The position numbers were made by a program, and so were the translations under genes. A model generated the notes under the pieces. The model searched no databases and was not told the origin of the DNA. It saw only the letters and a list, made by a program, of their open reading frames with translations. A stretch of DNA of 64,000 nucleotides. Source: Mizuhopecten yessoensis (Eukaryota). Below are positions 20,794-53,554 of this stretch, in pieces (the stretch's first letter is position 1; each line of letters opens with the position of its first letter). The stretch covers positions 260,077-324,076 of the forward strand of contig NW_018408900.1 in NCBI RefSeq assembly GCF_002113885.1. Direction: 5' to 3'.

Positions 20794-23609
20794 TCACAAT
20801 TTTGACTGTTTCTGAAGTATTTCTGGTCGTCTGTACATGGTAACAACAGCAGCACCCCCTATGCCAAAGTTGTGCTGGAGAGCAATTTTAGCCCCATCAA
20901 CTTGTTTAAGTTTAGCAGTCCCTCGCAACTGTGACACCAGCTCTGCACACTGCGCCAGACCTGTAATGAAATAAAAGCAACATTGCCTGTGGCTTCATAT
21001 TGTTCTAAACTACATGCATGTACAATAATATTTGTTAAACTGCAAATAACATCATTAAAAATTCTTGCTTTGGCTGTCCAAGAAATAAATAATTTAAGGA
21101 TATTGCGATCTCCACTACCCCCAGTTATTACTTTTCCAATGGCCCTTTAAACAAAAGTTAACAGCCCTTTTCAACTCATCACCCATATAAAATTTTGCAA
21201 TGACACTTTTAGTTATAACACAAACTCCTAGTAAGGACCTTTTTTGTATAATAGTTAATTAGAACAGGTAGATACATGTATAGTTTCACATAATATCTGG
21301 AATTCCCTGATTATTTCCAACATTTTAGCCTTAACAGACATAGAAAAAAAACATTAAGATATCCACTTTTTAGAATATCAAGGCAATATTTAAGAAGATG
21401 ACACAAATGTTGTTATACCTGTTGCCCCAATGGGATGACCTTTGGACTCCAGTCCTCCTGAAGGGTTCACGACCCATTTTCCACCAAGCTTGCAAATGTC
21501 TCCCCCATTTTTGTTTTTAATCCATTTTCCGTTGCGAATCAGATCTACACCTTTCCCTTCTTGTGCCAGCTGGAGAGCTTCATACATGAAGAGCTCATTA
21601 CACGAGAAGCAATCATGAACCTCTAGCACATCAACATCATCAGCAGTGAATCCAGAATCCTGGTAACAGCGCTTAGCTGCCTCCTTGGCCATACCGTAAC
21701 CAGACAGATCTTGGAAACTTCGTCCAAAGGAGGACTCCATGTCAGTGACCATGTGTTGTGCTATAATCTCCACAGCATGGTGCTGGAGGTTATTGGCCAC
21801 CACAAAATCCTCATTACACACAATGGCCGCCGCACCACCATCAGCAGTTGGAGCAGACATCCAAAATGTGATTGGGTCGCAAAGAGGAATTTTTGTTTTA
21901 ATGTCCTCGCGTGAAACAATCCTCTGTAATGCTGCTTTGGGGTTGTTCACACTCTGTTTATGGTTCTTATAGGAGATTTCCACCATGTCGTCTAGAGTTG
22001 CATATGGGTATTTCTTCAGGTATTCACGAGCTGCATATGCATATAATTTGACAACGTCTGATGTCATCTGATTGAGGCGTGGCTGGATGAGACCTGGCTC
22101 AGCTCCAATGTCCACCATGTGGTCCATATGACGCTTGACCGGTGATGTTCGGTCTGTGTACTTTTCAGAGAGACCTCTCTCCATCTTTTCAAAACCTGCA
22201 TACAAATAAAATTTAAAAAGATTTATGAAGGAGGGTCTATAATCAAACATGCTTGCGCAAAAACATCTATGAAAAGATCACCTGTGTTAACAGACTACTG
22301 CAATTTATGTTCCCTATTGAGTTGATTTCATTCAAATTCATTGTGAATTGAACCTGTATAAGAGACAACCTGCACTCTGAAAGTTTTGGCTGTATTTCCA
22401 TTTGTTCACAGTCAGCATCAAATACATTTTCATTATTTAAAAGGGAGATTTTTTTAGAAGATATTTCAGTAAAATTCAAATAAATCAATATTTTATGAAC
22501 ATCTATTTCTATAAAAATATGCCTGTAGTGCCTTAATGCAAATAGTTATCAAGTTATCGAAGGATAATTCATTCAGTCAATAAACTTAAAGACTGTTCTG
22601 TCACAACTTCACAACTGTTTAAAGTAATTGTTCTGTCACAAAATTTATCACCATTTCTTAAGATGTGAGTTATTTAATGACACAGAATAATAATTTATAT
22701 ATAAATAGTAAGATTAGAAAAGTACCAAGAGCCATGACACAGTCCTCCACTCAGCTCTGGACTAAACGTCTGGCCAACATTAGGGCACTGGATCCAGAGG
22801 AACAATTGTTGTTGACATTGAATATGGGGACGCCACTGAGTCCTAGGTTGTAAACAGCTCTCTGACCACTGGTTGGCTCTCCGTAACAGTAGCTGGCCAC
22901 CACAGCCTTCACATTACTGTATGGCAGTCCTGCATCCTTCAAGGCTGCCTCACCTCAGAAAGTAAAATAACAAATACATTTCCAATACATTTTTTATGTT
23001 CTCTATTAACTTGTTTTGCATGTAGTAAACTGCAATATATATGACAAAAATGTATATTTGCCTCTTCTATCAACCTAACTTTCAGAGCAATTATTTCCTT
23101 TAGTTCCATCTTTTATATAATTATACATGCAACTACAAGCCCACAAGCAGATTATGCAAAATTCTACTAGATTGATCTATTTTTCCATAGTAAATAATGA
23201 AAGTTTTCCCTTGCCCAAACATAAAATTTACTAGCCCGGGCATTTGACTAACAAAATTGTACATCCCTCGACACTGTGTAGCATTATATTATGGTGCACA
23301 GATTGTCATACTTGGAAGTTGCCTTTAGTGCAACATTTATGCTACTGAAATGACGGACAAGAAAATTTGTATACAGTGGACTGCACAGGTAAGGTATTAG
23401 TATGATACAGAAGAAAGACAGCTATTGTGACACACAAACGGCTAGATATAATTGTATATAAGTTTCTGTGAACATTGTGAATGATGATTACCTGCTTCCT
23501 TGCCCATATCTGGGTAGTCCCATGCTTTTGTCATTGGCTTCTCAAACTTGGTCACCCCTACTCCAACCACAAACGTTCTCATCTTGTTACGCAGTAAACT
23601 TGTCGCCAT
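20794..23609 (-). CDS. SCP2-thiolase (SCPx/P-44/DAF-22-like, thiolase domain only) with C-terminal SKL; one in-frame TGA at codon 107, so possibly a null allele or pseudogene
   Basis: Exons 23609-23492, 22953-22726, 22195-21419, 20960-20794 (430 codons including the terminal stop). Motifs [26 protein letters not shown] (catalytic Cys90), [48 protein letters not shown], ends QSKL*. TGA at 22753-22751. Confidence 0.9.
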
Positions 23610-26411: not shown

Positions 26412-26797
26412 CTGTCAGATTCTACACAATCATTTTAGCAGACAACTACTAGAGTGCTCTCCCCTTGATAAACACACTGGTTAGTATAATTTACCAATGT
26501 GTAGCATTTCGTTTTGTTATGATTACAAAACTTTTCTTTTCATTTCTCTTACAATAAAATTCTCAAATATAAACAAAATGATACGCAAGAAAATACATCA
26601 ACATGATTTTATGAAAAAAATGTTTTTAATAATATTGAAGCGATGTTTTTTTTTATTTCTTTCCGTACTTAAAAGTCTTGCTAAAAATAAGTATACAAAG
26701 ATACAAAGTCCGTTCCTACACTTGCCGGTACGTTGGGGACCTCGAGCTCTGTTGTGTAAAGTCAAATTGCTTATAAATTTAACATCAGACGCTAGAA
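26412..26797. promoter_or_regulatory. Probable thiolase/HSDL2 bidirectional promoter
   Basis: Consensus minus-strand donor CAG|GTGAGT at 26412 (candidate thiolase 5'UTR exon joining the acceptor at 23634) lies about 385 bp from the HSDL2 ATG. Confidence 0.5.
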
Positions 26798-29700
26798 ATG
26801 GCTGCAAACACTGGGTATGTATAGCATGGAACGGGTGCTAATGCTGAAATAAGATGAAATGAATGCTGCTTTAGATATGCTTTCATCGTAAATTATTTCT
26901 TGAAACTTTTTACAACAACTGTGAACAAGAATTTGTAAAGAAACTTTGGTCTTTGCACAGGACAGGGACGAATACATGAGAAAATTATACAAAGTTCCTA
27001 GGGTCGAAGTATCCTATTAATTATATAACACTTCGTACGGCCCATAATTTCCAAAGGGGCACATTGAGAAACGTTTTTATTTATGTCGTAAGTGTCATTG
27101 GCATTGAAATCGAAGTACACGCAACTAAGAGTGGAACCTGATTAAACCGACCGTAACGTAATTAAGGTGGCAGTACCCAAACCGAATCGGTACCCAAATC
27201 GGATCACTTTTTGCAAAAAAATACTTAAATGTGTCAACAAATCAGTTATAACAGAGACGTATTATACGTCTCTGGTTATAACAATGATGTAGTGTTAGAA
27301 TAGATAGCCATGCACCATTTTTTGTCTACAGGTAATTAAGTTTTTAAGTTCAAATAGCGCAAGAAAACGTAATTCAAACTCAAATGTCAATGTTTTGATA
27401 ACGTTTATAAAAAATGGTGCGTGCAATCTTTTTTGGACTATAGGAATAAATTCACACTAGAAATACTTTTTGCCATATAAATTCTAAAGGTCATCATAAA
27501 ATGTTAATATGCTGACAAAAAAATATTCATTTGAAGCGTACGATACTGCACAATTCAAGCCTTGATCCGTTTTGGGTCCCGACATTAGCAAAAACTGGAG
27601 ACGCTGATTGGTGACTATAAATATCTCAAGTGAGCCCAAGGTGCTAATTTGTTAGAACACCCATCAATATTCTTTCTTTGATACAACTATAAATGAATAT
27701 AATTCATCCCCAGATTTTTCAATGATTTAAAAAACTGAAGGTTTGGTGGTCCGATTTGGGTACTGTCACCTTACACTTTATGTTGAAAAATACCTCTCCA
27801 TACAACTCCTCAAACACTATGCTCCCAATTTCAACGAAATATATCAGATATGATAACTACTTTTTTGCAACCCTTTTTATGGAGTTATGGCCCTTTTTTT
27901 AAAAGTCCTTGTCCTGACAGTTTTTCCTAATCTACTAGGCCAATTTTAAAGAAAGTTTACGGATATGGCAACTGCCCCTACACGTTGTGCTTTCAAGTCG
28001 TGCTTTTTCATTTTGACCCTTTTAAAAGGAGTTATGGCCCTTTGTTGAAAAAAACTTTTTCTGCCTCCTAAACTACTGGGCCAATTTCAATGAAAGTTTA
28101 CAGATATGGTAATAAGCCCCTAATGGTGTTTTTTCATATTAACCTTTTTTTAAGGAGTAATATCCCTTTGTTAAAAATCTTTGTCCTGACATCTCTTCTT
28201 TACTACTAGGACACATCTCTTCCTTTACTACTAGGCACATTTCAGGAAAATTGTTCATCAGGGCTAACAAGATTTCATTTGCAAGTATGTTTAGGCATTG
28301 AGAGGGAGTACAGGAAGTATGTGAGTGATTTGTATACTTAAATAAGTGTACAGCTCAATCAATAAAGAAATCATTACTGATGGGAGACTATGGATTGCTT
28401 TGCAATGCTCTGCCTTAGTAAGACTTTAGCTTACAGTTTTGGTTTATATAGGAGCAGGTGTATTAGTTAGCCTTTGGCTTAGAGTTCTAATTGACATTGA
28501 TGTAAAAGTTCACTTGGCAATAAGTTATAACAATTGAAATAGGTTGGGAACATCTTCTGACTTTGAAAGGATGTATTGGATTATGATGCATCTTCTGAGT
28601 TCAGATCAAACAAGAGTAAATGATCTTTATAAAACTTCCATAAGAACAACTATGAAACAAGTTATTCCAACTTATTTTAATCAATCTTGTTGGTCCATAT
28701 TGTGTATCTTCATTTCAGTCTAATAATATTGACTAAGGTTATTATGCAGAATGCACAGCAGAATAACAAATAAACATAGTAAATTCTGTGCTTCATCAAT
28801 CTTTATTTTCCAGTATTATTTTGCCAACCAAGTATAGTTGAAATCTGATAATAGTTAAGAAGGTTGTCACATTGAAATAACAATGAACAACAGGGTCAGA
28901 CAAAGAGATGGATGAACGCCATTCCAGACATGGGTATGCCTTATTCTTACCTGTACAAAGATGAACCTACAGAATCAAAAGAAAGTTTTTATCGGTTCAG
29001 TATTTCGAGGATTGGTTAGGAATTTCAGTTTATCCTGTCAAGTCAGATGATGTTGAAAACCTGTTAAATGCAAAAAACAATTAAGATTCTCCTTTCAAAT
29101 TTATTTTGTAGTGTTTTAGCAGGGAAGACTCTGTTCATCACAGGGGCAAGTCGTGGTATAGGTAAAGCCATAGCCCTGAAGGCCGCAAGGGATGGAGCTA
29201 ATGTTGTCATAGCAGCAAAAACGACAGAGCCACATCCCAAACTACCTGGCACCATTTACACTGCAGCCAAGGAAGGTATGCTATATATGACACTTATGTT
29301 TGCACTAATTAGTAAAATAAATGTTTAACAGGGAAGAAACAGACATAAAAACTAGTTGCACACTGATCATTAAATCATTCCATTTATTATTGCCCGCTTT
29401 CACCGAAACGGGGGATATTGATTTGGGTTTGTCCGTCTGTCTGTCTGTTTGTCACGCTTCGTTTCCGTGCAATAACTACAACAAATGTTAACCGATTTTC
29501 TTCAAACTTGGTCACCGGGTAAAATGCCTTATGGGCTCGGCCAAGCTTGATGACCACTTTAATCGGACTCCATTCGGCAGAGTCATTATCTGCATGCAGT
29601 TTCCTCTTAATAACTCTAGCAAATATTAGATAAGGGGGGGGGGGGGGGGGGGGGGGGGTTCTTCAAGTTTCAAGCTATACATTATGTCTCCACAGAACGA

Positions 29701-32700
29701 TACTCACATGTTTAAACTTAACCTCAATAATGTTTATCTACAATATGCCCTGAAAGCGGGGGGTATAAATTCCACGAACTTGCTTGTTAATAGTAATAAC
29801 ATGCCTGGTAATAAGCCCATCCATGACTAGGATCAGGAGTAATCTAACCCATACACATGAGTTTTGTGTATAAGTTTGTGTACTTCTTGTCGAGTTATTA
29901 TGTTGTTCTCTGGTTATTGCAGTTGAGGATGCAGGAGGAAAATGTCTGCCCTGTGTGGTAGATATCCGACAAGAAGAGCAGGTACGGAAAGCAGTAGAGG
30001 AAGCAGTGGCCAAGTTTGGAGGGATTGATATCCTTATCAACAATGCCAGTGCTATCTCCCTCACTGGCACACAGGCAACTGGCATGAAGAAATATGACCT
30101 GATGATGAATATCAATGGCAGGGGCACATACCTCTGGTGGGTGTTATCTCTCTATATTTACTACGTATGGCATTGCCACTATATAACCCTTCCAAATTCA
30201 GTTGGCATTGATCATATAGGCTATGAATGCCATGAACCGATAATACCGATTGTTGACGTCATCATTATTATGATGTGATGATTGTTACGTTGGATACCAC
30301 TTACCCTCCACTGGCGATGGCTGTTCTATTCATTAAACAAGCATACACGGTACATGCATTATTTTAACTAAATGCTGAAAAAAATAAGTGTAAAATAAGT
30401 TTAGGAGATGAACAGATTCCAAAAAATGGTAAATATACATGCAAGTATTGAACTGCTTTTTGTTGGCATTCATAGGCAATATGAATTCCAAGTGGACAAA
30501 GGCAAATCCAACTAAAAGCAGTTCAATGCTTAGTGTTTGACAGCGGCAAAAATAGCTTTGTTTCTGTTAAAAAATACCTTAAATATTGTAAATGCTAATT
30601 CCATGATATGTACATGTATTACTTTATATAGGATATTTTGGGCAAGTAAATTTCATTTTTGGGGAATTGTTTTTTCCCCTGCCCACGAATTGTCTGTATT
30701 ACATTGGTACCAGGTGTATACATCAGGTTGAAAAAATATGTAATCTTTATTTTTGACCACTACTGGCCAAATATCACCTTGATTTCTCTTGGTTTTTAGA
30801 AGAAGTTGTTGAAAGTAAAAAGTTGACGCCAGACAGACAACGGACGCCGCACCACGGCATAAGCTGAGCTAAAAATGAGACAATGTTTTACTTTAATGTG
30901 ATTAAAATTTTTACAGTGTCTTAAAATATTATGTCTTTATTTCAGTTCACATGTGTGTATGCCTTACCTCCTGAAGAGTTCTAATCCTCACATTTTGAAC
31001 ATCAGTCCTCCCCTCAACATGAACAAGGATTGGTTCAAAGGCCATGTTGGTGAGAATCACTCAAATATTTATTTTTTTAAATATATTCAATCAATGGGTA
31101 AAGACTTTTTGCAAGATAACCAGATTTCTAGGTCATTTAATATTAATGCCATTGTATCACTTCACTATTTCTAACTTTGTTTTCATCAAGTACATGTACT
31201 TTGTAGGTCATAGTTATCTAGAATTTGGGTATTGACCATATCCCCCAAAACTCCTATCAAAGGTTTTGGTGAATTCTTGCAAACAAAATGTAGATTATAT
31301 ATATTTTTAATTTCTATTTTGTTTCTCTTTTAAATTTATTGCATATATTTCATCACTAGCTGATACTGAAATTACAGTAATTTCAATAAATATAGTCCGA
31401 ATTATTCTGAAGTTTTATCGACTTTTTTTTATATCGGTCTGTCGTCGATTAATGACAGACCGAAATAAAAAAAAAAATCAAATAAACGTCAGAATAATTC
31501 GGACTAAGTAGAAACTTGATTGATAGCTATATATATTGTCAGTTGTCGGCATTAAATTCAATGCAAATACTAGCTGTTGATGCCAATTATATCTTACTAA
31601 ACTTGGAGCACAATAACAATTTTGAAAAGTGTTGAATAAACAGCTGTTCATCCATACCCCCTGAAACTTCTGTGTGAAATACATTTGAAAATCAAATGTT
31701 GCAACTGATTAAGTAAACATTGAAATGGGAAATGATCTCAATGTTGATTCTAGAGGGAAGGTACAATTTATTTTCTTTTGGTGTCCAAAGTTCAATAATC
31801 ATGAAGCTGATTTAGGGAGTTGCTTGCTGATGATTGGTAAATTCATACCCTAACTTGACTATTTAGGAAGTACTGGTAATATTTTACAGCCTACACTATG
31901 GCCAAGTATGGGATGTCCATGTGTGTCTTGGGGATGGCTGAGGAGTTCAAACCTGAAGGTATTGCTGTGAATGCTCTCTGGCCAAGAACAGGTAAATTTC
32001 AAAAGGTTTAAACAAATTTAATGTCCCATCATCTTCCTGAATATGTATTCCACACCCTTGTAGGTAAATCAGCTTATAATCTAATTAAAATAAACCTGTA
32101 GAGTTAACCTTTATGTGGAAAATTATATCGAGTCATAGCATGATTTTTCAAGGTACATTCATTTGTTCATTGTTCAGGTGTACCCTGGGACATCACAGCT
32201 GTTTCACCTGTCTTACTTTGGACAAAAGATCTATCTATACACCTCATATAAATATAGCTTCACCTTTTGATATGGTAATCATAAGTCTACATATCAATTA
32301 AGTCTTTGTGGTCTATATATCAAGTCTTTGTGGCCTATTTAATTGTCATTACTCATTATCTGCTATATTTAAAGCTTCCTGTCTTCATTGTTTCAATGTT
32401 TTGCTGATTAATACAAAATGCTGTAGCTTGTGTAATTACATTTTCTAGCTCACCAGGTCCGAAGGACCAAGGTGAGCTTATGCCATACTGTGGCGTCCGT
32501 CATCCGTCCGTCAACAATTTCTTTAAACGACTTCTTCTTTTTAACTACTGATTGGAATTTAATTTAATTTGACTGGATGCATCCCTAGGTGGTGGGGATT
32601 CAAAATTGTACAAATGGTGGAGCTGACCCCCCAGGGGGCTGAGGGGTGGGGCCATAAGGGGGCAATTTGGCTATATTGCTACAAACGACTTCTTCTGTAG

Positions 32701-35700
32701 AACTATGCCATGGATATCGATCATATTTTGTCGGAAGCATTCATGGGAGGGAGGGATTCAAAATTGTACAAATGGTGGGGCTGACCCCCCAGGCTAAGGG
32801 GTGGGGCCAAAAAAAGTTTATTACATGGAAATGGTTGAGATCCCACCATAAAACCATATATACAATTGCTGAGTATACAAAGAAGAATGCACATTTGCTT
32901 CCAGGATGGCCCTAGGGTCTGGTCCCACCCTTTGAGACATAGTCCCTGGGCCATAACTTTAAAATGGTTAAGATCCCCACCCCAAAACTATATATACAAT
33001 TGTTGGGCATAAAGAGACGAATGCAGTCATGATATTAGAATTGACCCCAGGGTCTGCCCCACCCTTTCAAACTTAACCCTTGGGTCATATTTTTGAAACA
33101 GTTGAGATCCCCACCCCAAAACTGTATATACAAATGCTGGTCAAAAAGAGAATAATGCAGTCATGATATTAGAATTGATCCTGGGTTCTGGCCACAACCC
33201 TAGGGACCCCGTTCCTGAGTCACAGTTTAGAAACAGTTGAGATCCCCACCCATAACCATACATAAAATTGCTGGGCATGAACAATCTAATTCAGATATGC
33301 TACAAGGATTGGCCTTGGGGTCTGGCATATTCCCTTGGATCTCATTTGGAGAATATTTTGCCATGATTGCTTAGATATCCAGGTGAGCGATACAGGCCCT
33401 CTGGGCCTCTTGTTCTTGTATGTTTGCTTTACTTTGAGCTCCTATTCTAATTCTAAAAATGACATATTTTTTTCACTGGATCTACTTTTTTTTTGAAATA
33501 ATACAACCAGAAAGAAAAGAAAAAAAGAAACTTCTAAATAAAATAGGCATTTGGAAGCTGTACATGACCGAGTTTGATCTGAAACAGCTGTCTGCCCATT
33601 TACTTAAATGTGTTGGTATTTTCCAGCCATCTACACTGCTGCCATGGAGATGTTAGGGGGTGGAGATGAGGTAGCTAAGCAGTGCCGCAAGCCTGAAATC
33701 ATGTCGGATGCTGCCTATGTGATGCTGACCAAAAACAGCAAATCCTACACTGGGAACTTCGCCATTGATGACGAAGTACTCACAGCAGAAGGGATCAAGG
33801 ATATGGAGCAATACAGTTGGGTCAAAGGTACAAAACTAGGGTCACATGTATCGTTATCTCATATATTAGAATCAGAAACAGACCTAAGCAAAGTGTTAAA
33901 CAACATGCTGAAAACTCTTTCTTGAACAACACAGCAAATCTACCTGCACACAGATAATATAGAGTTACAACAACAAACATAGTTCTATAGCACACCAGGT
34001 GCTGTACCCGGCCTTCCCACTCAAGTTCCTTTCTTTTGTCATCCATGACTGACTTGGTCACCACTTGATGGATAGCCCTATAGCGCTATCTCCAATTCCA
34101 CATACCCCCATCAATAAATGCATGATGTTACCCAAATCATAAGATTTGACCTCAAATGTACTTTTGACCAAAGTGCTGCTCTCTATTGATACCAACTGTC
34201 TTACATGTTATAAGATTGTCTCATTCTTTATAAGCCCATCAGATGGTGGACTATTCAAATCACCCTGCATCCGTGGTCCATCTGTCCCATCATTTCGTCC
34301 GTCATTCCATCATTGCGTCCGTCCTTGAAAAATTTTGTTTGCATTATTTCTCAGAAAGTACTGGAGGTATCTTTCTTAAATTTCACATGAAGGTTCCCCA
34401 TGATCCCTAGTTATGTATATCTTTTTTTTGGGACTGATTGCAAATCCAAAATGGCCGATAGGCAGCCATCTTGAATTTGAAAGTTAAAGTTTGTAAGCAC
34501 TATTTCTCAGAATGTACTGGAGGGATCTTTCTTAAATCTTTCATAAAGGTTCCCCATGATCCCTAGTTTATGCATTTCAAATTTTTGGGATGATTGGAAA
34601 ACCAAGATGGGTGGCAGGTGATCGTATTGAGTTTGGGGGTAAACGTTTTTTAGCCCTATTGCTCAAAAGGTCTTGTATGGATCTTTCTCAAATTTCACAT
34701 AAGGGTCCTCTTGTTCTTAGTTATGCATATCAAATCATATTGGCTGGCCATCTTGTTACAGTTTAAGCTTCTTATCGCTATTTCTCAGAATTTACTGGAG
34801 AATTTTTTCTCAAATTTGATATGTATGTTCCACTTGGTCCTGAGTTGTGCATGTTAGCTTTTGAGGTTGATCAAAAGGTTGATTAAGATGGCAGATAGAG
34901 AAAAGATCAAACTTACATAGAACTAATGAAGATGGTACTATGGTGGGTGCCAAGATCCGTAGCTCTGGGATCTCTTGCCATTAATTACCTAATTTACAGC
35001 CCATTTTGTTTCAAAAGGAACTTTTAAAGGGAGTAGTAACAACAGATTTTCTAATCCTATACCTCTGTTGAAAGAATCGTTTCAGACGTAGTATGATTTC
35101 CTCATGGTCCTAAGAAATGTTTCTTTCAAGTTTTATTTGAAATGATTTGTTACTTCTGATTAGCTTTTGCATTGTTTTTATCTTCACAGAATCAGCCATA
35201 TAGATTTTGACCAAACTTGGCAAGAGTTCACATGGCCCTAAACACATAATAATACCATGTTAGCCACATTCATGAATTTACTGATCATGAAGTAACACTA
35301 ATCAATGCATTTAAGTTGTCTGTTAATAAAGTACATGTATCAGATTTAGCAATACAGATCTTAATGACCCGTTTTCTAGTGACTACAGGAGTTCAGGCTT
35401 GGAAAAATTAAAAATTCTTGATTCAAGAAAGATTTTAGAGAAAATTCATGACGCAGGGCCCTGGTCTAATTAAAGAAAAATTCTGTACCTTATTTTAGGC
35501 AGCAAACTTCTACCCGACTTCTTCCTTGATGTTGATGCCAACACACTGAGGGAGCAAATGTCTGAAGGTGGTGCCACGCCTGCTTTTGGCGGAACCAAAG
35601 GGGGTGCTGGACCAGCCAAGACCTTTGACGCCATCCAGACTATGCTTAGTGAGGAACTAGTAGGCAGTATCGGAGGTGTCTTCCAGTTCAATTTATCAGG

Positions 35701-36719
35701 TAAGTGGTCTCTTGGCAGATTCATAAAAACGAGTAAATAATATAGTCTTGTTATTGGTCTCTGATATCTCTGCACAATGTTTAGTATTTGATGGATGTCA
35801 GGAAGGACTGTTGTCAGAATATTGTGACAGGGTGGAGTGTTTATGTCCAGGTTAAGCAAAACAAAAAAATACTTGTTTCTGCTAACGTTCCAATTTCATT
35901 TTGGAAAATACTTTCACTACGCTTATATAGAGCAGACTTCTGACTTTAACAGTGCATTATCACTATATGATAAAATCTCTTAGGGTAGGCACAAAAATCT
36001 AAGGTAGGTAGTTTGCGGAAAACATTTTTTCTATTTGGCCTTTTGACATTTCAGTGAGTGATCACTTAAAGTGCCCTTTGAGTGGCCTGTCATCTGTGGA
36101 CATATGGCCTTAGTCTTTGTTCAGCATATCAATTTTAATGCAAGATGTACATTTGTTTGAAGTTTGAAACTAATTCAACCTTACTACCTGGGTACACTGT
36201 ATACAAGCCTGTTCTTGTGTGCTAATGCCTGATGACATTACAATAATTAACTACACTACACTGTTTCTCTGTAATGAGAGCAAGTTTATCATGACTAAGA
36301 CTGGTTGTATACAGTATTTCCAGTGTGAAGGTAGTGTTAATTTTAGGCTTATACTAGTACAGATTTCACATGTTAGATTTGTCACTTAGGCAAACGTTGC
36401 CGGCCATACATTATATCAGTAGCGTCCATCTCAGCTGGTTGTCGGGCAATGTACCTGAGTTTGTTTTTGTGTTGTAGGGACTGATGAAAGTACATGGTTC
36501 ATCAATTTGAAATCTGGCGAGGGTAGTTTGGGACCTGGTGAGCCCCCAATGGGAGCTGACTGTACAATGAGCATGGACAGTGCTGACTTTCAGAAGATGT
36601 TCGGAGGAGAGCTCAAACCTGTTGCAGCCTTTATGTCTGGCAAACTAAAGATCAAAGGAGACATGGCTTTGGCCATGAAGCTAGAAAAACTCATGAACAA
36701 AATGTCACCAAAATTGTAA
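26798..36719 (+). CDS. HSDL2: Hydroxysteroid dehydrogenase-like protein 2 (SDR + SCP2 domain), 8 exons, about 414 aa
   Basis: Exons 26798-26814, 29112-29275, 29923-30136, 30946-31049, 31890-31991, 33627-33827, 35499-35699, 36478-36719. Motifs MAANTG, TGASRGIG, PHPKLPGTIYTAA, NNASA, NISPPL, catalytic YTMAK, PDFFLD, SCP2 domain (AFMSGKLKIKGDMALAMKLEKLM), ends SPKL*. Confidence 0.95.
27163..27773. mobile_element. TIR element, possibly Kolobok-like, non-autonomous
   Basis: TTAA-GGTGGCAGTACCCAAA ... TTTGGGTACTGTCACC-TTAC. It adjoins, and is probably inserted in, an older GAGTTATGGCCCT-repeat element that extends to about 28420. Confidence 0.65.
29388..29788 (+). mobile_element. Helentron-like element containing a G25 run
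   Basis: CCCGCTTTCA ... TGAAAGCGGG subterminal IR, (GTCT)n tract, G run 29634-29658, ends CTTGTT. Confidence 0.5.
30443..30531. repeat. Short inverted-repeat element
   Basis: AAGTATTGAACTGCTTTTTGTTGG ... CCAACTAAAAGCAGTTCAATGCTT. Confidence 0.6.
31393..31506. mobile_element. Palindromic element, family C (diverged copy)
   Basis: TAGTCCGAATTATTCTGA...TCAGAATAATTCGGACTA; aligns with 14596-14717. Confidence 0.8.
32441..33414 (+). mobile_element. Helentron-like (HINE-type) element with tandem core repeats
   Basis: TTTTCTAGCTCACCAGG..hairpin..GGTGAGC, (CGTC)n, internal repeats, end CCAGGTGAGCGATACAGGCCCTCTGGGCCTCTTGTT. Confidence 0.75.
34228..34977 (+). mobile_element. Helentron-like element with approx. 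160-bp internal repeats
   Basis: GCCCATC ... GGTGGGTG IR, CGTCC tract, repeated TATTTCTCAGAA..GGATCTTTCT.AAATTTCACAT, end GATCC..GGATCTCTTG. Confidence 0.6.
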
Positions 36720-40600: not shown

Positions 40601-43600
40601 TAACACACAATTCCTTTATCTGATAACAAAACAAAATGCTACAAATCATGACGTCACAATGGAATATGCTGGAAAAAAGCATTGTTGCCCGATATAATAT
40701 TCAATAGCCTGGCTAACAAACTCACCTCCAGTTTGTTACATACATGGGGTAACATGAAATGTCTTATCACATTTTTGCATGTTTATGTCCGATGCTTCAG
40801 GGAAAATTTTTGTTTAACGAATGTGTATTAATTACATTTCATGTGGTATATGTATTTAATTATGATAAAGTTCTCTCAAGATTATGATTACCACTTCAAG
40901 TATCATGAAAATATTAAATTATGCATTATCATAAAACGTACGTGTTGAGTAAAATGTGAAACAAAGTCCATGCATTAATATTAGAAAAGGTCCTGTCGCA
41001 AAATTAAGAAAATAAAATAATCTAAAGTATTCAACGTCCATGACGGGACAATGCTTCACACATAAGGTCTTATAAAACTGATTAGCTTATGTTTCTTGGG
41101 TGCGGTCATAGTATACCTTCAAAGCAGCCAGCGTGATGAAGAAGTTCCAGTGTACACCATACTCGGACACATGTTCATGGTAGTTAGCTCCCTTTGTCAG
41201 GGCAAATCGCAGCAGCCCCAGAAACAGCAATGGTAAACAGGATATAAGGCAGTTCACTAGGCAACGAACCCTGTCAAGTGAAAGAGCACTTGGAGAATCA
41301 CTACATAAACAGTAAAACCTTGTTATTTTTAACCAAGTAGCAAAAACAAATATAGAGAAGGGGCATTAAATTGGGGTTTTATTTCATATATTTACTATGA
41401 ATTTGAGATACCTAGGTTATTTTCATTTATTAAGTTCCAGGCAGTTTAAAGGAACTAGTGGTGATCATGTGATTTATCTACATTAAAATGTACAGGTAAG
41501 CAAAGTTTTACCGACCTGTATGGAAAGCTTATATCTGGAAGTAGGCAACTGTAGACTATTCCCAGGAACTCATATTTAAATGTCATCTCATAGTGTGAAA
41601 CCTGTCTTTAACAACACCTGACTTTAACGACAATCTGTCATATCACTAATGATCTTATAGCCACAAATTAAAAGACGTCTTGATTAAAAACAAGAGGCCC
41701 ATGGGCCTTAACGGTCACCTGATATATTTATGCAGAGAGTTGATTTCGTTTTTAACATGAACAGAAATATTATTCAAAGTGACAAAAAACAATAAAACCA
41801 CCTTATTCAATATCAAGCATACAGATTTCAGACTAAAAAGGATTTGAAACTAGCACCTCTGATTCTAAACAAGGAAAATGAAGAAATTTTAGCACACTGA
41901 CTCCCTTGAGCCCCACCCTACAGCCCTTGGGGGTAGGGCTGGCTCAAAATTTTCAAAGTATCAAACTGTCAACTCAAGGTTATAATTCCAATCAAGTTAT
42001 TAACATGTAATATTCAAAGTATCATTTGCCATTATAAACCATAATAAATTTTGGCCCCCCCCCCCCCTTCCCCAGGGGGTAAACGTGAGACCCTAGGGTC
42101 ATAAACCTTAAGACCCTTCCATCTATGAAGAGTATTTGATTCTACCATATCTGGGTCTTGAGAAGAAGATTTTTGAAATTTCAGTCAATTCAACCCTTTT
42201 TGGCCCCACCCATCAGCCCCTGGGGGTCAGTCAGGGCTCATAGGTGCATACTATCAAACTGCTACCTAATACTGATAATGCTAACCCAAATTGAATTACT
42301 TCCAATGGAAATTAAACAAATGTTGGTCCAAAATGTGATTTCCCTATATAAACTATAGTAAAGTTTACCCCCTCCCCAGGGGGAAACGTGAGACCCCAGG
42401 GTCAAGAAATTCACAATTTCGGTAAAGCACCTTAAGACCCTTCCATCTATGAAGAGTATTTGATTCTACCATATCTGGGTCTTGAGAAGAAGATTTTTGA
42501 AATTTCAGTCAATTCAACCCTTTTTGGCCCCACCCATCAGCCCCTGGGGGTCAGTCAGGGCTCATAGGTGCATACTATCAAACTGCTACCTAATACTGAT
42601 AATGCTAACCCAAATTGAATTACTTCCAATGGAAATTAAACAAATGTTGGTCCAAAATGTGATTTCCCTATATAAACTATAGTAAAGTTTACCCCCTCCC
42701 CAGGGGGAAACGTGAGACCCCAGGGTCAAGAAATTCACAATTTCAGTAAAGCACCTTAAGACCCTTCCATCTATGAAGAGTATTTGATTCTACCATATCT
42801 GGGTCTTGAGAAGAAGATTTTTGAAATTTTAGTCAATTTGACCCCTTTTGGCCCCGCCCCTCAGGCCCCTGGGGGTGTAGGACAAAACCGGCAACTATTT
42901 TTGTTGACCTTTGTCAATGGAAGGTCCCTGCAAAATTTCATTGAAATTGGTTCAGGGGTTTTGGAGAAGAAGTCAAAAATGTAAATTGTTTACGGACGCA
43001 CGACGGACGACGACGGACAAAAGGCGATCGCAATAGGTCACTTGAGACTTTGTCTCAGGTGACCTAAAAAAAGTTTATATGTCATGTTCTTTATGTTTTT
43101 CTTTCATACTTTCCACTCATGAAGACTAAAAGGTTGTCAGTCATTGTCCTGTGAAACCTGAATTAACTGAAACCTGACTTTTAGAACATCATGTAAAATC
43201 CTACACAAAATTTTAAGGCTCCTTAAATAACTATTTCCAGGGGTGTTAATCAGATTTCAAGTTGAATGTACCAAACACGAAGAAGGTGGTTAATTTCAGT
43301 ACATTTCATAACACCCCATTAACATTCTTCTAATCTTTTATGAAAATAGTTGGTGAAATTTCTGAAGGAAAACGGTATTTTTAGTGGCTACTGGCTACAA
43401 ATGAAATCCCATGGGTTTCTTACACTTACAGACAAGCTGTCTTAACTTGCCAAATGAATGGACCCAAAAAAATGATTTGGTAAAGACGGGTTACACCTTA
43501 CATTTGATATACAGACCTAGACGTATGCAACTGTAAACTCAATCTCAATAAAACTTTTCTATGCAAGAAATGGGAAATTTATTTCAACTTCATTCATGTA

Positions 43601-48961: not shown

Positions 48962-51900
48962 CTAAGCAGGTTGTATTAGCTCTTGTCCCGGAATCTCGCC
49001 CTCCAGGAAGAAGTCCAGAGACAATTTTCCGCCTGCATGAATGAAAAACAAGAAAATATTTGAAAACATGATTGGCCGAGAAAGTGATTACGAGAGGTAT
49101 CTTCGTAAAAGAAATATTCACCGTAAAACACCCCAAACAAATAATCGTTTCGACTGTGTTAGAGCAGCGACGTATATAACACATGGCTTGATACTTCTCT
49201 GGTTAGAGTGAACAAGAGCAGAAATATGTTTTTGCACGGGCTTAGATTTCCGTGGGTTTTTTTTACCAGTGATTCCCCTAACCTAGAATATACGAAAGCA
49301 TGAAAAGGCGTTGGGATATCAATAATTTATTACTATTTAAGTAATAATGTAGTATGCATTCAAACGAATAAAAACAAAAAAAACTTGTACTGGTATATAT
49401 AAATGAGATTTGACGGCGGCAGAGCGATGGTCTTGATTCTCCGGCCCCTCACTTTGCAACAATAATATGAGATAAACCTACCAGGTACACAGGAATATTT
49501 GCCAATGTCAGTCACTCCAGCATCACGGAGGATCTCGTCATCAATGGCGAAGTTCCCTGTATACGTTTTGCTGTCCTTTGTCAGAATAGTGTAGGCCGCG
49601 TCCGCCATGATCTCCGGCTTACGACACTCCCGGACAATCTCCTTGTTGTCCGCGCAGATCATCTGGACAGCCGCCGTGTATATGGCTGGGTAGAAAAACA
49701 TGAACTGGACACCAATTACATTTTTCCTGGATACACCAGTCACATGAAAAGACTAAGAGCATTAACACGCCGTGTTAAGAACACTAGATTGACATTTCCA
49801 GTCTAAAAAATAAATGCACGAACATATCAAATAAATAAACCGAATTATAATGTGATGTCGGTTAATATTAAACATGATTATATTCTATGCTTAAAAATCG
49901 TCGATTCAAAACTCCGATAAAAATAGCTTCGATTTGACGTTAACATAATATAAGCAAACTGTGTAGATGGATGTCTGACCTATGAGTCGAAAGGCGTTAA
50001 GGGGATGTAGTCCATGATACCTGGTAACTTAAAGCTCCAAAATTAAACATAAACGAAGTACATTTTTTTTTTTAAATCGGAATTTAGAGAAAGCTGAATG
50101 CCACGACATTGATAAAGGAAACACGACTACTAAACTTAGTTGTACTGACCAGTTCGCGGCCAAAGGGCATTCACAGCCACGTGCTTGGACCGAAACTCCT
50201 CAGCCATCCCTAGGACACACATGGACATCCCATATTTGGCCATGGTGTAGGCTGTAAAATAGAGTATCAATACAACTTACTATGTACTATGCATAAAGAT
50301 GTGGATATGTCCGCCAAACTAGACCATAGAGCCTTCAAAATGGCAGAAAAATATACTTATTGTATTTTAATTTGTCATGCTACATGAAGTCTTATTTTCT
50401 TTTGCGACGCAAGTACATTTTCTGTCATCCAGTATGCCCATGGGAGAAAAGTCAGCTATATCGAACTAGGATCGATATTTGACCTCAGATGAACTTACCA
50501 ACGTGATCTTTGAACCACCGACTGTTGAGGTTGAGAGGGGGACTAATGTTGAGGATGTGGGGGTTGTCGCTTTTCATCAGGTAGGGGAGACACATCTTTG
50601 AACTGGAAATCATAAAAGTACCTTGATAGCAATAGCAGTATAATATACTAACATAAATGTTCTCTAACTTTATGTGATCCGATTTGAATCTCTTAAAATA
50701 TGTTTACTAAATGAGACTTAATGTTTGCTTATCTTTCGTGATATTCTTGTGTTCAAAAACGATTTTAATGTCGCTGTGAATTTTCCGCATTTTGTTTCGC
50801 GATACCGAATTATCGAAATGTGGAAGGGGATCCATAGAATCTATAGCTGTTTTCAGATTTATTACGACTAAACATCGGCTCAGCTGATTTTTTTTCTTTT
50901 AATGGTATTTCTTTATTAACAAGCGGGTTAATTGGAAATGCCATAAATAGTTACCATAGAAACGTGCCCCGCACGTTGACTCCCATCATCAGGTCAAACT
51001 TCTTCATCTCAGTGTCCAGTGTTCCGGTCATGTTAATTGCACTGGCATTATTAACAAGGATGTCGATCCCTCCAAATTTAGCAACCGCCTTCTCCACAGC
51101 TGACTTTACTTGGTCCTCATACCGGATGTCCACCTGACACGCTAGATACGCCCCTCCAGCCTCCTCCACTGTCACATAAACAACACAAAAATTATCACAA
51201 TCTCTAAAGCCTAATAATGATGTGATCAGAGAAACAACCCATCCAGAACAGTTTTTATTAATTTGATCCTTTCCTTTCATCAGTACAGTAGCCAATACCT
51301 ATCATTAGGAAGATCTAGGCATCCTACTTACTGTTGTCATGGTTATCAGGCCTTTACTACACATAATTATTGCTATCATCATGACATCAAAAAACGCCCC
51401 TACACACTCTAGTGTTTCAAGTGGTTATCATGCCAAGCCCATATAAACACTATCAGGCCACGCCCCATCAATCTCTCATATTGAGGTTATTAGGCCACGC
51501 CCAAACACACTGTAATATTGAGGTTATAAGACCAAGCCCATAAACACTATCACTGAGGTTATCAGGCCACGCCCAAACACACTCTTATATTGAAGTTTTT
51601 AGGACACGCCCAAAATACGCACTTGTAACCTCAAAAGTGATCTGAAATAAAGCTACAGGCAAAATATCAGTATTTATGACTGTAAGTTATTACGCCACGC
51701 CCGAAAACACTATCACAGATGTTATCAGGCCACGCCCTAACAAACTCTTATATTGAAGTTATTATAGGCCACGCCCATAAACACTATCACTGAGTTATTC
51801 AGGCCACGCCAAAACAGGCTCTAATAATGAGGTTATTAGACCACGCCCATACAAAAACTGTCACTGAGGTTATCAGGCCACGCTATCACTGAGGTTATCA

Positions 51901-53554
51901 GGCCACGCCCTAACACTATCACTGAGGTTATCAGGTCATGCCCTAACACGTCCACTGAGGTTATTAGGTCACGCCCTAATACTATCAGTGAGGTTATCAG
52001 GCCACGCCCTAACACTATCACTGAGGTTATCATGTCACGCCTTAACACTATCACTGAGGTTATCAGGCCACGCCCTAATACTATCACTGAGGTTATCAGG
52101 CCACGCCCTAATACTATCACTGAGGTTATCAGGCCACGCCCAAACACTATCACTGAGGTTATTAGGTCACGCCCTAACACTATCACTGAGGTTATCAGGC
52201 CAGCCCTAACACATCCTAGTGAAGCAGACTTTTTTGTGTCGAAGACATGTAGGGCTCTTTTCGCGTATACGGTTCAATCGGTTTGTCTGTGTATAAAAGT
52301 AACATTTTCGGGTATAAGCAGTCTTGCAAGGCTTTGTCAAGGCTCGCCTGAAAGCAGCATCAGATTATTAAGTCCCAGTGCTGTATTTTATAAACAAACA
52401 ACTCTTGTATAACCGGTTCAACCGTTTGGAACGCGATAAACGAATGCAGCCTATGACACTTTAAAAAGCCAAGTGTTTGCTCTTAATGTCATATATCTAC
52501 GCTACACCTTTGGATTTCTCACGACATAGTCAAAAACTCACGGTTAGTTATTTGACTGGTTCCAGACAACAAACCAATTTCAAGGCTGATCAACAGAGGT
52601 ACGTGTGATAGTCGGTCATCTTTACCGTTACGCTGCTGCAGTATTATCTTATTTTATTTTTAACCAAAACATCACTCTGAGATCACAGGTATGCAGCATT
52701 CCGTAAAAAGTTCCAGACTCGTCTGCACGCATCATCCGCGCAAGGTGTGTAATCCTTAATTTCCAAAGATGATACAATCTGCCAGTATATTAACAGTTGC
52801 ATATTTTCTCGGAGTAGACACGAAATTATCGAAAAATTTCAAATCGCGAAAACTCGTACATTAGCAGTAGATTTGTAGTTAAATCGAAATCAACTTGCAT
52901 TCAAATTCAATAAGTGAATTTTCATAACAGCAACGTTAAACATGTCGGATGATTAATATCTGTCGTGAGGCGTACCTTCCTTGGCTGCAGTGTAAATGGT
53001 GCCAGGTAGTTTGGGATGTGGCTCTGTCGTTTTTGCTGCTATGGCAACATTTGCTCCATCCCTTGCAGCCTTCAGGGCTATGGCTTTACCTATACCACGA
53101 CTTGCCCCTGTGATGAACAGAGTCTTCCCTGCCAAGGTATTGCTGAAACGGAATCCGAACTATTTAATTATAACCTGATAATGTACGTTGATTAATGTAT
53201 AACTCGACACTCCTTCCAAAAACCGTAATTTACATCAATTTCATATTCATATTTTGCATGTTGACAAATCAATATCATCTCGTCATCTGATTGGTTTCGA
53301 CACGTCACGAGTTGATAATATTTAAGAAGTACAGTGCATAAAATATTGTTTTAAGGAAAAATAGAGCTATGAAATACAAACTTACAACTATAAGTATATA
53401 ATACGAGCCGACTTTGAAAGGATAGTAAATATTTTCAGAATAAATAATGTATTAACGGATAATTATGTCTAAGCATCTTTTCGAATACTATAATCTGGTT
53501 ATAACTGAAGTTCACACATATAAAAATAATGCAAAACCTGGATTGTGTAGACAT
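48962..53554 (-). CDS. HSDL2-like paralogue, SDR domain only, 7 exons, about 292 aa
   Basis: Exons 53554-53538, 53142-52976, 51168-50955, 50602-50499, 50251-50150, 49685-49482, 49032-48962, with the same intron positions and phases as HSDL2. TGASRGIG, NNASA and YTMAK are intact. Ends LDFFLEGEIPGQELIQPA*. Confidence 0.9.
51340..52212. repeat. 33-bp minisatellite AACACTATCACTGAGGTTATCAGGCCACGCCCT
   Basis: About 10 homogeneous units at 51860-52210, more diverged units to the left; lies in intron 2 of the HSDL2-like gene. Confidence 0.95.

What the first reader, a model, noticed from the sequence alone, without database searches (positions are those of the whole stretch)
29116..29275. Exon-limited homogenisation between old HSDL2 paralogues
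Seen: 29116-29275 and the reverse complement of 52976-53135 differ at 4 of 160 nt (3 synonymous). Exon 3 differs at about 65 of 214 nt (hand count) and the flanking introns are unrelated. Near-identity at silent sites in one exon is not explained by protein constraint. Inference: recent or recurrent gene conversion keeps the NAD(P)-binding N-terminus identical while downstream exons diverge.
Basis: partly seen in the sequence, partly recalled or inferred. Interest (0 to 1): 0.75.

Follow-up and report, generated by a model that had tools for sequence, protein, structure and literature searches.

The report
Exon-sized gene conversion between HSDL2 paralogues
Two long-diverged, tail-to-tail copies of a scallop dehydrogenase gene share one almost identical 160-base exon, most likely because that exon was copied from one gene onto the other; this is a clean example of an ordinary, well-known process.

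Summary
29116-29275 and the reverse complement of 52976-53135 differ at 4 of 160 bases: 3 synonymous and 1 Val/Ala.

The window carries two convergent HSDL2-type genes.
- A (+ strand, 414 aa) has the SDR domain, an SCP2 domain and a C-terminal -PKL.
- B (- strand, 292 aa) has the SDR domain only.

Silent-site divergence (pS) is 0.07 in exon 2 and 0.70-0.79 in exons 3-6. Intron flanks are unrelated. In 20,000 permutations, none produced so clean a 159-base window.

The near-identity is not an assembly artefact.
- Raw RNA reads of another sample show both exon-2 versions, in about the proportion of A and B splice junctions.
- DNA contigs of two further individuals run B's own introns into the shared exon.

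One "difference", 29184 C/T, is polymorphic within A and matches B's letter.

In exons 3-6, B is as far from A as from octopus or brachiopod HSDL2. A is 95% identical to Pecten maximus HSDL2. The duplication is therefore old.

Best reading: interlocus gene conversion, confined to exon 2 by the non-homologous introns. Whether it recurs is untested, because no orthologue DNA was reachable.

The scan has already noted exon-sized conversion at two other loci of this genome. Known kind, modest interest.

The parts
26798..26814 (+). Gene A (full-length HSDL2), coding part of exon 1 (M A A N T G-), followed by a GT donor
   Evidence: 82 RNA reads run on from exon 2 into letters that equal 26792-26814 plus 29112-29118 (loose end at 53132). 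There is a unique match in the window. The donor GTATGT is shown. The N-terminus is identical to P0205, Pecten maximus HSDL2.
29112..29275 (+). Gene A exon 2 (164 nt): Rossmann-fold start with the TGASRGIG NAD(P)-binding motif
   Evidence: Pfam adh_short positions 1-39. The acceptor follows from the A-type loose end. The donor lies at 29276. 91 RNA reads run on into A's exon 3.
29116..29278 (.). Homogenised tract in A (partner 53135-52973 in B): 4 differences in 160 nt plus 3 shared donor bases
   Evidence: A single 160-nt contig node spans 52973-53132 in two independent DNA runs.
29923..30136 (+). Gene A exon 3
   Evidence: tblastx and splice sites; tblastn with P0044.
30946..31049 (+). Gene A exon 4
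31890..31991 (+). Gene A exon 5 (catalytic Y-x-x-x-K stretch YTMAKYG)
   Evidence: That this stretch is the catalytic motif is recalled, not tested.
33627..33827 (+). Gene A exon 6
35499..35699 (+). Gene A exon 7 (linker, LLPDFFLD)
   Evidence: tblastn, splice sites, colinear with P0205.
36478..36719 (+). Gene A exon 8: SCP2 domain, ends -SPKL, stop TAA at 36717-36719
   Evidence: PF02036 at E 3e-18 in the genome scan and 2e-21 on the exon translation; coordinates.
53538..53554 (-). Gene B (SDR-only paralogue), coding part of exon 1 (M S T Q S S-)
   Evidence: RNA joint 53142->53538, 7 reads; sequence.
52976..53142 (-). Gene B exon 2 (167 nt), partner of A's exon 2
   Evidence: RNA joints 53142->53538 (7 reads) and 51168->52976 (8 reads); Pfam adh_short.
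50955..51168 (-). Gene B exon 3
   Evidence: RNA joints.
50499..50602 (-). Gene B exon 4
   Evidence: RNA joints 50602->50955 and 50251->50499.
50150..50251 (-). Gene B exon 5
   Evidence: RNA joints.
49482..49685 (-). Gene B exon 6 (one codon longer than A's)
   Evidence: RNA joints 49685->50150 and 49031->49481, cut +1.
48962..49032 (-). Gene B exon 7, coding part: -GGKLSLDFFLEGEIPGQELIQPA, stop TAG at 48964-48962; no SCP2 domain follows
   Evidence: RNA joint, 4 reads; sequence; no SCP2 match on B's side of the window.

Best explanation
The window holds two convergent (3' ends facing) paralogues of hydroxysteroid dehydrogenase-like 2 (HSDL2) in a pectinid scallop.
- Gene A is the ordinary HSDL2: SDR domain, SCP2 domain and a C-terminal -PKL, 414 aa.
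- Gene B is an old SDR-only copy of 292 aa. It is transcribed about eleven times less than A and is correctly spliced.

Their second exons lie 23.7 kb apart in inverted orientation. They were homogenised by interlocus (ectopic) gene conversion. In this process a break in one copy's exon 2 is repaired from the other copy's exon 2.

The tract cannot run on into the flanks, because the introns, and even the first 4-7 bases of the exon, share no homology. Strand invasion and annealing need homology, so the tract is exon-sized by necessity, not by design.

Exon 2 is the segment under the strongest protein constraint and is the longest well-conserved block. It is therefore the one place where enough DNA identity can persist for this to happen.

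Shown:
- the near-identity;
- its confinement to the exon;
- the age of the rest of the genes;
- both genes expressed;
- both exon-2 versions real.

Inferred:
- conversion as the cause;
- the last event being far younger than the duplication (dS 0.07 against a saturated value);
- a weak hint that A was the donor.
For: **(1) Divergence per exon, Nei-Gojobori.**

| Exon | pS | Synonymous differences / sites | pN |
|---|---|---|---|
| 2 | 0.071 | 3 / 42.3 | 0.009 |
| 3 | 0.715 | | |
| 4 | 0.788 | | |
| 5 | 0.703 | | |
| 6 | 0.784 | | |

pN in exons 3-6 ranges from 0.09 to 0.25. Among codons that encode the same residue in both genes, 49 of 52 are identical in exon 2 and 73 of 141 in exons 3-6 (Fisher p 8e-9). 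Protein constraint elsewhere in these genes therefore does not freeze silent sites.

**(2) Flanks.** Intron flanks are unrelated.

**(3) Copy number.** The 988-Mb genome holds only these two copies of exon 2 and of exon 3.

**(4) Not an assembly artefact.**
- In raw RNA reads of run X23, B-type letters appear at 8 of 111 reads (53044) and 16 of 116 reads (53052).
- This fits B's share of junction reads: 8 B exon2-exon3 joints against 91 reads running on into A's exon 3, and 7 B exon1-exon2 joints against 82 running on into A's exon 1.
- In DNA contigs of X4 and X8, two other studies, B's intron 2 and intron 1 contigs each end with a 30-nt overlap on a single 160-nt node, 52973-53132.

**(5) Shared polymorphism.** At 53067 (= 29184), 73 of 115 RNA reads carry B's letter although B contributes only about 8% of reads. 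Gene A in that sample therefore segregates C/T.

**(6) Silent sites of exon 2 are not frozen within the species.** A second synonymous variant, 53088 (= 29163), is at 62 of 113 reads.

**(7) The paralogues are old.** Residues identical over exons 3-6:

| Comparison | Identical residues |
|---|---|
| A vs B | 141/203 |
| A vs Pecten maximus HSDL2 (P0205) | 193/203 |
| B vs seven named animal HSDL2s | 137-148/204 |
| of which B vs Octopus | 148/204 |
| of which B vs Pecten maximus | 143/204 |

A B-like exon 6 exists in another, unnamed organism (P0269): 57/67 identical to B and 38/66 to A.

**(8) At protein level B's exon 2 is scallop-A-like.** It is 52/53 identical to P. maximus. It shares the Thr at position 37 of the exon-2 alignment that most other molluscs lack.

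**(9) No RNA element.** There is no Rfam match, and the exon folds no better than shuffles (z -1.33).
Against: - No DNA of animal orthologues could be reached. The direct test, exon-2 silent sites among other scallops with exon 2 grouping by species, was not done.
- The only DNA control is bacterial. 26 metagenome ORFs are 70-92% identical in protein to exon 2 with pS 0.76-1.07. Their G+C content is very different, so this shows the principle only.
- GC3 of exon 2 (0.40 in both copies) is lower than in any other exon of A (0.50-0.59) or B (0.59-0.71). This is the opposite of the GC enrichment reported for long-running conversion in mammalian gene pairs (PMC2720389, passages seen).
- The C/T at 29184 is a transition at a fourfold site and could be a recurrent mutation.
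- Contig depths at the shared node are inconsistent. In X8 it is 22.8 against 10.6-13.3 in the flanks, about double as expected. In X4 it is 14.7 against 10.5-14.5, not doubled.
- B-type letters are absent from the X4 and X8 contigs. This may be bubble popping or a real polymorphism.
- RNA reads were not phased letter by letter to B's exon 3.
Confidence: 0.83

Rival explanations
1. Constraint on the nucleotide sequence itself keeps silent sites of exon 2 unchanged in both copies since the duplication. The cause would be an exonic splicing signal, an RNA structure, a regulatory RNA target or extreme codon preference. No DNA is exchanged.
For: - Exon 2 is the most conserved part of the protein: 46-53 of 53 residues identical from brachiopod to scallop.
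- The tract coincides with the exon.
- GC3 is oddly low, 0.40.
Against: - Two synonymous variants at intermediate frequency sit inside A's exon 2 in a single RNA sample: 29163 at 62/113 reads and 29184 at 73/115 reads.
- There is no Rfam match, and folding is not better than shuffles (z -1.33, 18 of 200 shuffles fold as well).
- In equally conserved peptide stretches of exons 3-6 only 73 of 141 same-residue codons are identical.
- Bacterial homologues 85-92% identical in protein have pS 0.84-1.07.
Confidence: 0.05
2. Assembly or polishing artefact: reads of one copy were used to build or correct the other copy's exon 2, so the true copies differ more.
For: The assembly is fragmented, 82,659 contigs. 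The two copies share 65- and 68-nt identical runs that short reads resolve poorly.
Against: - The window has no N.
- Independent DNA contigs of X4 and X8 tie B's introns on both sides to the shared exon node by 30-nt overlaps, with 0-1 differences in the listed flank pieces.
- RNA reads joined to B's exon 1 (7 reads) and to B's exon 3 (8 reads) lie on B's exon 2 at 95% likeness or better.
- B-type letters are present in RNA at B's expected share.
Confidence: 0.02
3. Conversion templated by spliced RNA or cDNA of the more highly expressed gene A, rather than by A's genomic DNA. The tract is then exon-limited because the template has no introns.
For: - Homogenisation of coding sequence only has been taken as a sign of cDNA donors in fungal ribosomal-protein duplicates (PMC6993855, passages seen).
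- A is about 11 times more abundant than B in RNA.
- Two other loci of this genome were noted with exon-limited homogenisation (unchecked notes).
Against: - Only one of six shared exons is homogenised, and no intron has been lost.
- The first 4-7 nt of the exon are not converted.
- A genomic donor with non-homologous introns predicts the same exon-sized tract, so nothing here calls for RNA.
Confidence: 0.08
4. B is a young chimera: an old SDR-only gene recently acquired A's exon 2 by a non-homologous insertion or partial duplication, not by homology-dependent repair.
For: B's exon 2 is scallop-A-like at protein level, while its other exons are equidistant from all molluscs.
Against: - An insertion would bring flanking A intron sequence or leave a second, displaced exon. 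Neither is seen.
- Intron phase and position are the same in both genes: 17 coding nt in exon 1 of each.
- The borders sit within 7 nt of the homology limits on both sides.
Confidence: 0.02

Closest known systems
Mosaic concerted evolution of old mammalian gene pairs (BMP8A/B, DDX19A/B, TUBG1/2; PMC2720389, passages seen)
   Same: Old duplicates in which some exons evolve in concert by gene conversion while other exons diverge. One pair, BMP8A/B, is also inverted on the same chromosome.
   Different: In those pairs the converted fragments span introns as well as exons, and converted regions are GC-enriched. Here a single 160-nt exon is involved, the introns are unalignable, and GC3 is the lowest of all exons.
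Human RHD/RHCE (PMC4824203, passages seen)
   Same: The geometry matches: two paralogues with their 3' ends facing each other and another gene between them. In RH this is TMEM50A in about 30 kb. Here it is a GWT1/PIGW-like gene, with about 12 kb between the stop codons. Frequent gene conversion occurs between the copies. That RH conversions can be exon-sized is recalled, not read here.
   Different: The RH genes are a young duplication, alike along introns too. The scallop pair is old, with saturated silent sites outside exon 2.
Homogenisation of coding sequence only in duplicated fungal ribosomal-protein genes (PMC6993855, passages seen)
   Same: dS is far below intron divergence, and the flanks are not homogenised.
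   Different: There the whole coding sequence is homogenised and a cDNA donor is proposed. Here one exon of six shared ones is homogenised, and nothing requires a cDNA donor.
Exon-sized conversion at two other loci of the same genome (earlier notes s1-514877, SLC22 paralogues; s1-517211, secreted-protein gene array)
   Same: Same genome, same pattern: near-identical exons between old paralogues with unalignable introns.
   Different: Different genes. These are unchecked AI notes that I did not test.

Membership tests
Interlocus (ectopic) gene conversion tract | A segment of two paralogues is far less diverged than the rest of the genes, beyond chance | tested here: met
   4/160 against 22-36% in exons 3-6. 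0 of 20,000 permutations reach it.
Interlocus (ectopic) gene conversion tract | The similarity holds at silent sites and is not explained by constraint on the sequence | tested here: inconclusive
   - pS is 0.07 against 0.70-0.79.
- Silent polymorphisms occur inside the exon.
- No RNA family or structure was found.
- A bacterial control exists.
- No animal orthologue DNA could be compared.
Interlocus (ectopic) gene conversion tract | Phylogenetic incongruence: the converted part groups by species, the rest by paralogue | tested here: inconclusive
   Tested at protein level only. B's exon 2 is 52/53 identical to Pecten maximus HSDL2 and 45-49/53 to the six non-pectinid HSDL2s compared. B's exons 3-6 are 143/204 identical to P. 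maximus and 137-148/204 to all seven. There are few informative residues. No B orthologue with an exon 2 was available.
Interlocus (ectopic) gene conversion tract | Polymorphism shared between the paralogues | tested here: inconclusive
   29184 C/T segregates in A with B's letter: 73/115 reads in X23 against a B share of about 8%. This is one site and a transition, so recurrent mutation is not excluded.
Interlocus (ectopic) gene conversion tract | GC enrichment of the converted part (a frequent companion, not a defining feature) | tested here: not met
   GC3 is 0.40 in exon 2 against 0.50-0.71 elsewhere.
HSDL2 (hydroxysteroid dehydrogenase-like 2), gene A | N-terminal SDR domain plus C-terminal SCP2 domain, colinear with named HSDL2 proteins | tested here: met
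   - adh_short on exons 2, 3 and 5.
- SCP2 at E 2e-21 on exon 8.
- 94-100% identity per exon to Pecten maximus HSDL2, P0205, with the same length of 414 aa.
HSDL2 (hydroxysteroid dehydrogenase-like 2), gene B | N-terminal SDR domain plus C-terminal SCP2 domain | tested here: not met
   The SDR part is present. The coding sequence stops 23 codons into exon 7. No SCP2 match lies on B's side. B is an SDR-only paralogue of the HSDL2 family, not a full HSDL2.
HSDL2, peroxisomal targeting | C-terminal PTS1-type tripeptide | not testable with these tools
   A ends -PKL and B ends -QPA. That -PKL can serve as PTS1 is recalled, not tested.

The most novel reading that the evidence does not exclude
Exon-limited homogenisation may be a recurring feature of this scallop genome rather than a one-off. 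Three loci have now been noted. It could reflect repair templated by spliced transcripts of the more highly expressed paralogue, still going on in the population.

Three observations would fit this.
- A carries B's letter at 29184.
- B-type letters are missing from two individuals' contigs.
- The shared node has double depth in X8.

The inverted geometry would also allow a crossover in exon 2 to flip the 23.7-kb segment between the two exon 2 copies. That would swap promoters and first exons between the two gene bodies without breaking either gene.
Probability: 0.1. Interest if true: 0.6.

Novelty: new member of a known kind. Interest (0 to 1): 0.3.

Why it matters
This is a very clean, minimal case of homology-limited gene conversion. 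One 160-base exon was reset between genes whose other exons are saturated at silent sites.

Its practical weight is for annotation and phylogeny.
- Trees or dS built on the N-terminal exon would date this duplication wrongly.
- Short reads and k-mer graphs cannot tell the two exons apart.

It also documents an expressed SDR-only HSDL2 paralogue in scallops that lacks the SCP2 domain and the C-terminal targeting signal. Together with two earlier notes on the same genome, it suggests that a genome-wide count of exon-sized conversion in bivalves would be worthwhile. It does not reveal a new mechanism.

Tried and rejected
- **Other copies in the genome.** None were found for exon 2 (DNA) or exon 3 (protein).
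- **An SCP2 domain for B.** None was found.
- **An RNA element in exon 2.** There is no Rfam match at E<=1, and the fold z-score is -1.33.
- **Further conversion patches in exons 3-6.**
  - The first 57 nt of exon 5 have 5 differences, and exon 6 has a 25-nt identical run.
  - Seven identical codons in a row is about what chance gives at 52% codon identity.
  - I make no claim on these.
- **My first guess for B's exon 1 (around 53226-53260) was wrong.** It rested on CCAAT- and CRE-like motifs. RNA joints place exon 1 at 53538 and above.
- **An apparent shift of intron 1 between A and B was also wrong.** Both genes have 17 coding bases in exon 1. B simply has one extra codon at the start of exon 2.
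- **Orthologue DNA.**
  - I used 26 of them: those among the first 34 rows (L003-L036) whose match covered residues 1-53.
  - I left out L009, L012, L027, L029-L032, L035 and every row after L036.
  - All 26 are uninterrupted bacterial ORFs, so no animal orthologue DNA was obtained.
- **B orthologues.**
  - The word-indexed search with B's exon 6 gave one B-like fragment, P0269, among 63 hits.
  - The top 120 of 7,996 hits to P0033 held no B-like protein.
- **Spliced model.** All searches were exon by exon, so a full-length search, fold or tree of A and B was left out.
- **Literature.**
  - 'hsdl2' + 'gene conversion' gave 3 papers. 'hsdl2' + 'scallop' gave 4 papers.
  - I saw listings only. 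None is by title about paralogue conversion.
  - Supplementary files were not opened. The sliding-window files of PMC2720389 and table S9 of PMC6993855 might refine the comparisons.
Full report
**The observation.** The stretch 29116-29275 and the reverse complement of 52976-53135 differ at four of 160 positions: 29118 A/G, 29184 C/T, 29199 T/A and 29207 T/C. In frame, three are synonymous and one turns Val into Ala. A self-comparison of the window finds this pair at 97% over 166 nt. Three more exon pairs lie in the same order at 70-83%, and nothing matches between them. The window has no N.

**What is there.** The two stretches are the second exons of two convergent genes. tblastx between the two halves of the window, splice-site reading and tblastn with full-length homologues give gene A on the + strand.

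| Gene A exon | Coordinates |
|---|---|
| 1 (coding part) | 26798-26814 |
| 2 | 29112-29275 |
| 3 | 29923-30136 |
| 4 | 30946-31049 |
| 5 | 31890-31991 |
| 6 | 33627-33827 |
| 7 | 35499-35699 |
| 8 | 36478-36719 |

- Gene A encodes 414 residues: a short-chain dehydrogenase domain (Pfam adh_short), an SCP2 domain and a C-terminal -SPKL.
- It is colinear with, and per exon 94-100% identical to, the 414-residue protein that NCBI names hydroxysteroid dehydrogenase-like protein 2 of Pecten maximus (P0205).
- The organism is therefore a pectinid scallop. Earlier notes of this scan call it the Yesso scallop.

Gene B lies on the - strand.

| Gene B exon | Coordinates |
|---|---|
| 1 (coding part) | 53554-53538 |
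| 2 | 53142-52976 |
| 3 | 51168-50955 |
| 4 | 50602-50499 |
| 5 | 50251-50150 |
| 6 | 49685-49482 |
| 7 (coding part, stop at 48964-48962) | 49032-48962 |

- All six of B's introns are confirmed by spliced raw RNA reads of run X23, with 4 to 12 reads per joint.
- B encodes 292 residues and keeps the dehydrogenase part and the LDFFL motif.
- It has no SCP2 domain and ends -QPA.
- Both genes have 17 coding bases in exon 1, with the same intron phase.
- The genome of 988 Mb has no third copy of exon 2 or exon 3.
- Between the two 3' ends lies the first exon of a GWT1/PIGW-like gene on the - strand (weak Pfam match, below the cut-off).

**How unusual exon 2 is.**

| Exon | Nucleotide differences | pS | pN |
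|---|---|---|---|
| 2 | 4/159 | 0.071 | 0.009 |
| 3 | 64/210 | 0.715 | 0.18 |
| 4 | 31/102 | 0.788 | 0.19 |
| 5 | 22/99 | 0.703 | 0.09 |
| 6 | 72/198 | 0.784 | 0.25 |

- Outside exon 2 the silent sites are saturated.
- Where both genes encode the same residue, the codon is identical in 49 of 52 cases in exon 2 and in 73 of 141 cases elsewhere.
- Third positions differ at 3 of 53 in exon 2 and at 111 of 203 elsewhere (Fisher p 7e-12).
- None of 20,000 permutations gives a 159-nt window with so few mismatches.
- The last 150 nt of intron 1 and the first 150 nt of intron 2 align like shuffled sequence.
- The first 4 nt of A's exon 2 and the first 7 nt of B's are also unlike.
- The tract is thus about 160 nt. 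It starts just inside the exon and ends at the splice donor.

**Is it real?** Three independent data sets say yes.
- *RNA reads.* On B's exon 2 most RNA reads of X23 come from A.
  - 91 run on into letters that are A's exon 3, and 82 into A's exon 1.
  - 8 and 7 reads are joined to B's own exons 3 and 1.
  - B's letters at 53044 and 53052 are seen in 8 of 111 and 16 of 116 reads, the share expected for B.
- *DNA contigs.* In contigs of X4 and X8, from two other studies, the contigs that carry B's intron 2 and intron 1 each end with a 30-nt overlap on one 160-nt node, 52973-53132. Its ends are exactly where A and B begin to differ.
- *What remains unclear.*
  - That node carries A's letters, and B's letters are not in those contigs.
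  - This may be bubble popping, since contigs drop variants, or it may mean that B is fully A-like in those animals.
  - The node's depth is double that of the flanks in X8 (22.8 against 10.6-13.3) but not in X4 (14.7 against 10.5-14.5). I leave this open.

**Polymorphism.** At 53067 (= 29184), 73 of 115 RNA reads carry B's letter, far above B's 8% share. Gene A in that sample therefore has both C and T. One of the four reference differences is thus a polymorphism shared with B. A further synonymous variant at 53088 (= 29163) stands at 62 of 113 reads. Silent sites of exon 2 do vary within the species, which argues against nucleotide-level constraint. So do the lack of any Rfam match and an unremarkable fold.

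**Age of the paralogues.**
- Over exons 3-6, A and B share 141 of 203 residues.
- A shares 193 of 203 with P. maximus, 166 with Mytilus and 150 with Octopus.
- B shares 137-148 of 204 with each of seven named animals, and no more with scallop A than with Octopus or Lingula.
- A B-like exon 6 exists in one other, unnamed organism: P0269 is 57/67 identical to B and 38/66 to A.
- The duplication is therefore old, probably older than the split of the bivalve lineages compared. That dating is an inference from distances, not from a tree.
- In exon 2, by contrast, B is 52/53 identical to P. maximus HSDL2. It shares the scallop and oyster Thr at position 37 of the exon-2 alignment, where most molluscs have Ala.
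- This is a small protein-level version of the 'exon 2 by species, the rest by paralogue' test. It hints that A was the donor.
- GC3 of exon 2 (0.40) is also nearer to A's other exons (0.50-0.59) than to B's (0.59-0.71).

**Mechanism.** The best reading is homology-dependent repair of one exon 2 from the other (interlocus gene conversion) between inverted copies 23.7 kb apart on one chromosome.
- Strand invasion and annealing need homology, and here homology ends at the exon's edges. An exon-sized tract is therefore what a genomic donor must give.
- Exon 2 is the longest block under near-absolute protein constraint, so it keeps the highest baseline DNA identity.
- The last exchange is much younger than the genes: dS 0.07 against a saturated value.
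- It is not very recent. The two listed long intron contigs of other individuals differ from the reference by about 0.1-0.3% (pieces 11 and 17). The two exons differ by 1.3-2.5%.
- Whether exchange recurs cannot be told from one genome.
- The low GC3 speaks against long GC-biased conversion of the mammalian kind (PMC2720389, passages).
- A spliced-RNA or cDNA template, as proposed for fungal ribosomal-protein duplicates (PMC6993855, passages), is possible. It is not needed: only one exon is affected and no intron is lost.

**Comparison with what is known.**
- Mosaic, exon-wise concerted evolution of old gene pairs is established (PMC2720389).
- The tail-to-tail geometry with a gene in between mirrors human RHD/RHCE (PMC4824203, passages).
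- Two other loci of this genome were already noted with the same pattern (unchecked notes, not tested here).
- I found no paper linking HSDL2 with gene conversion or with scallop paralogues (listings only).

**Limits.**
- The metagenome scan gave only bacterial homologues. The 26 used are 70-92% identical in protein with pS 0.76-1.07. These show that such protein conservation does not by itself freeze silent sites, but their base composition is very different.
- No animal orthologue DNA was reachable.
- RNA reads were not phased read by read.

**Verdict.** The finding is a tidy new example of a known process, with an expressed SDR-only HSDL2 paralogue as a by-product.

Noticed in passing
window 48188-48357 (- strand): First coding exon of another gene lies between the 3' ends of A and B. 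It has a weak match to the start of Pfam GWT1 (PIGW-like; E 5e-4, below the cut-off). RNA molecules begin at 48368, and depth there is higher than over gene B.
   Followed up: partly
window 51501-51700 and 52301-52500 (B's intron 2); tandem repeats 51394-52216: Two short stretches have contig depths of 10,000-45,000 in the DNA and RNA-labelled runs, and hundreds of RNA reads with loose ends. They look like very high-copy interspersed or satellite repeats sitting in a tandem-repeat field.
   Followed up: no
window 42015-42876: Tandem repeat with a unit of about 315-325 nt at about 91% identity, between the two genes.
   Followed up: no
window 31890-31946 vs 50251-50195; 33740-33765 region: The first 57 nt of exon 5 differ at only 5 positions, and exon 6 holds a 25-nt identical run (GNFAIDD). 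These could be vestiges of older micro-conversion or chance. They are not significant by a rough count.
   Followed up: partly
loci L003-L036 (metagenome contigs): Bacterial SDR ORFs are 70-92% identical in protein to the 53 residues of scallop exon 2. This is a striking conservation of this Rossmann-fold start between bacteria and animals.
   Followed up: partly
protein P0001 (593 aa, unnamed source): A predicted protein made of two nearly identical SDR-only HSDL2-like halves in tandem. It may be a fused prediction over a very recent tandem duplicate, or a second case of homogenised copies, in another organism.
   Followed up: no
window 50559-51120: Run X15 is labelled 'RNA?' by guess, but it has a 562-nt contig running straight through B's intron 3. 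That run holds DNA or unspliced RNA.
   Followed up: no
window 52973-53132: B's three internal letters are absent from the contigs of two other individuals. The shared node's depth is double the flanks in X8 but not in X4. This may be contig simplification, or B's exon 2 may be fully A-like in some animals.
   Followed up: partly
window 22751-22753 and 58551-58787: Earlier first-reader notes on this window record an in-frame TGA in a thiolase upstream of A, and tandem splice donors in MRGBP beyond B. I did not look at either.
   Followed up: no
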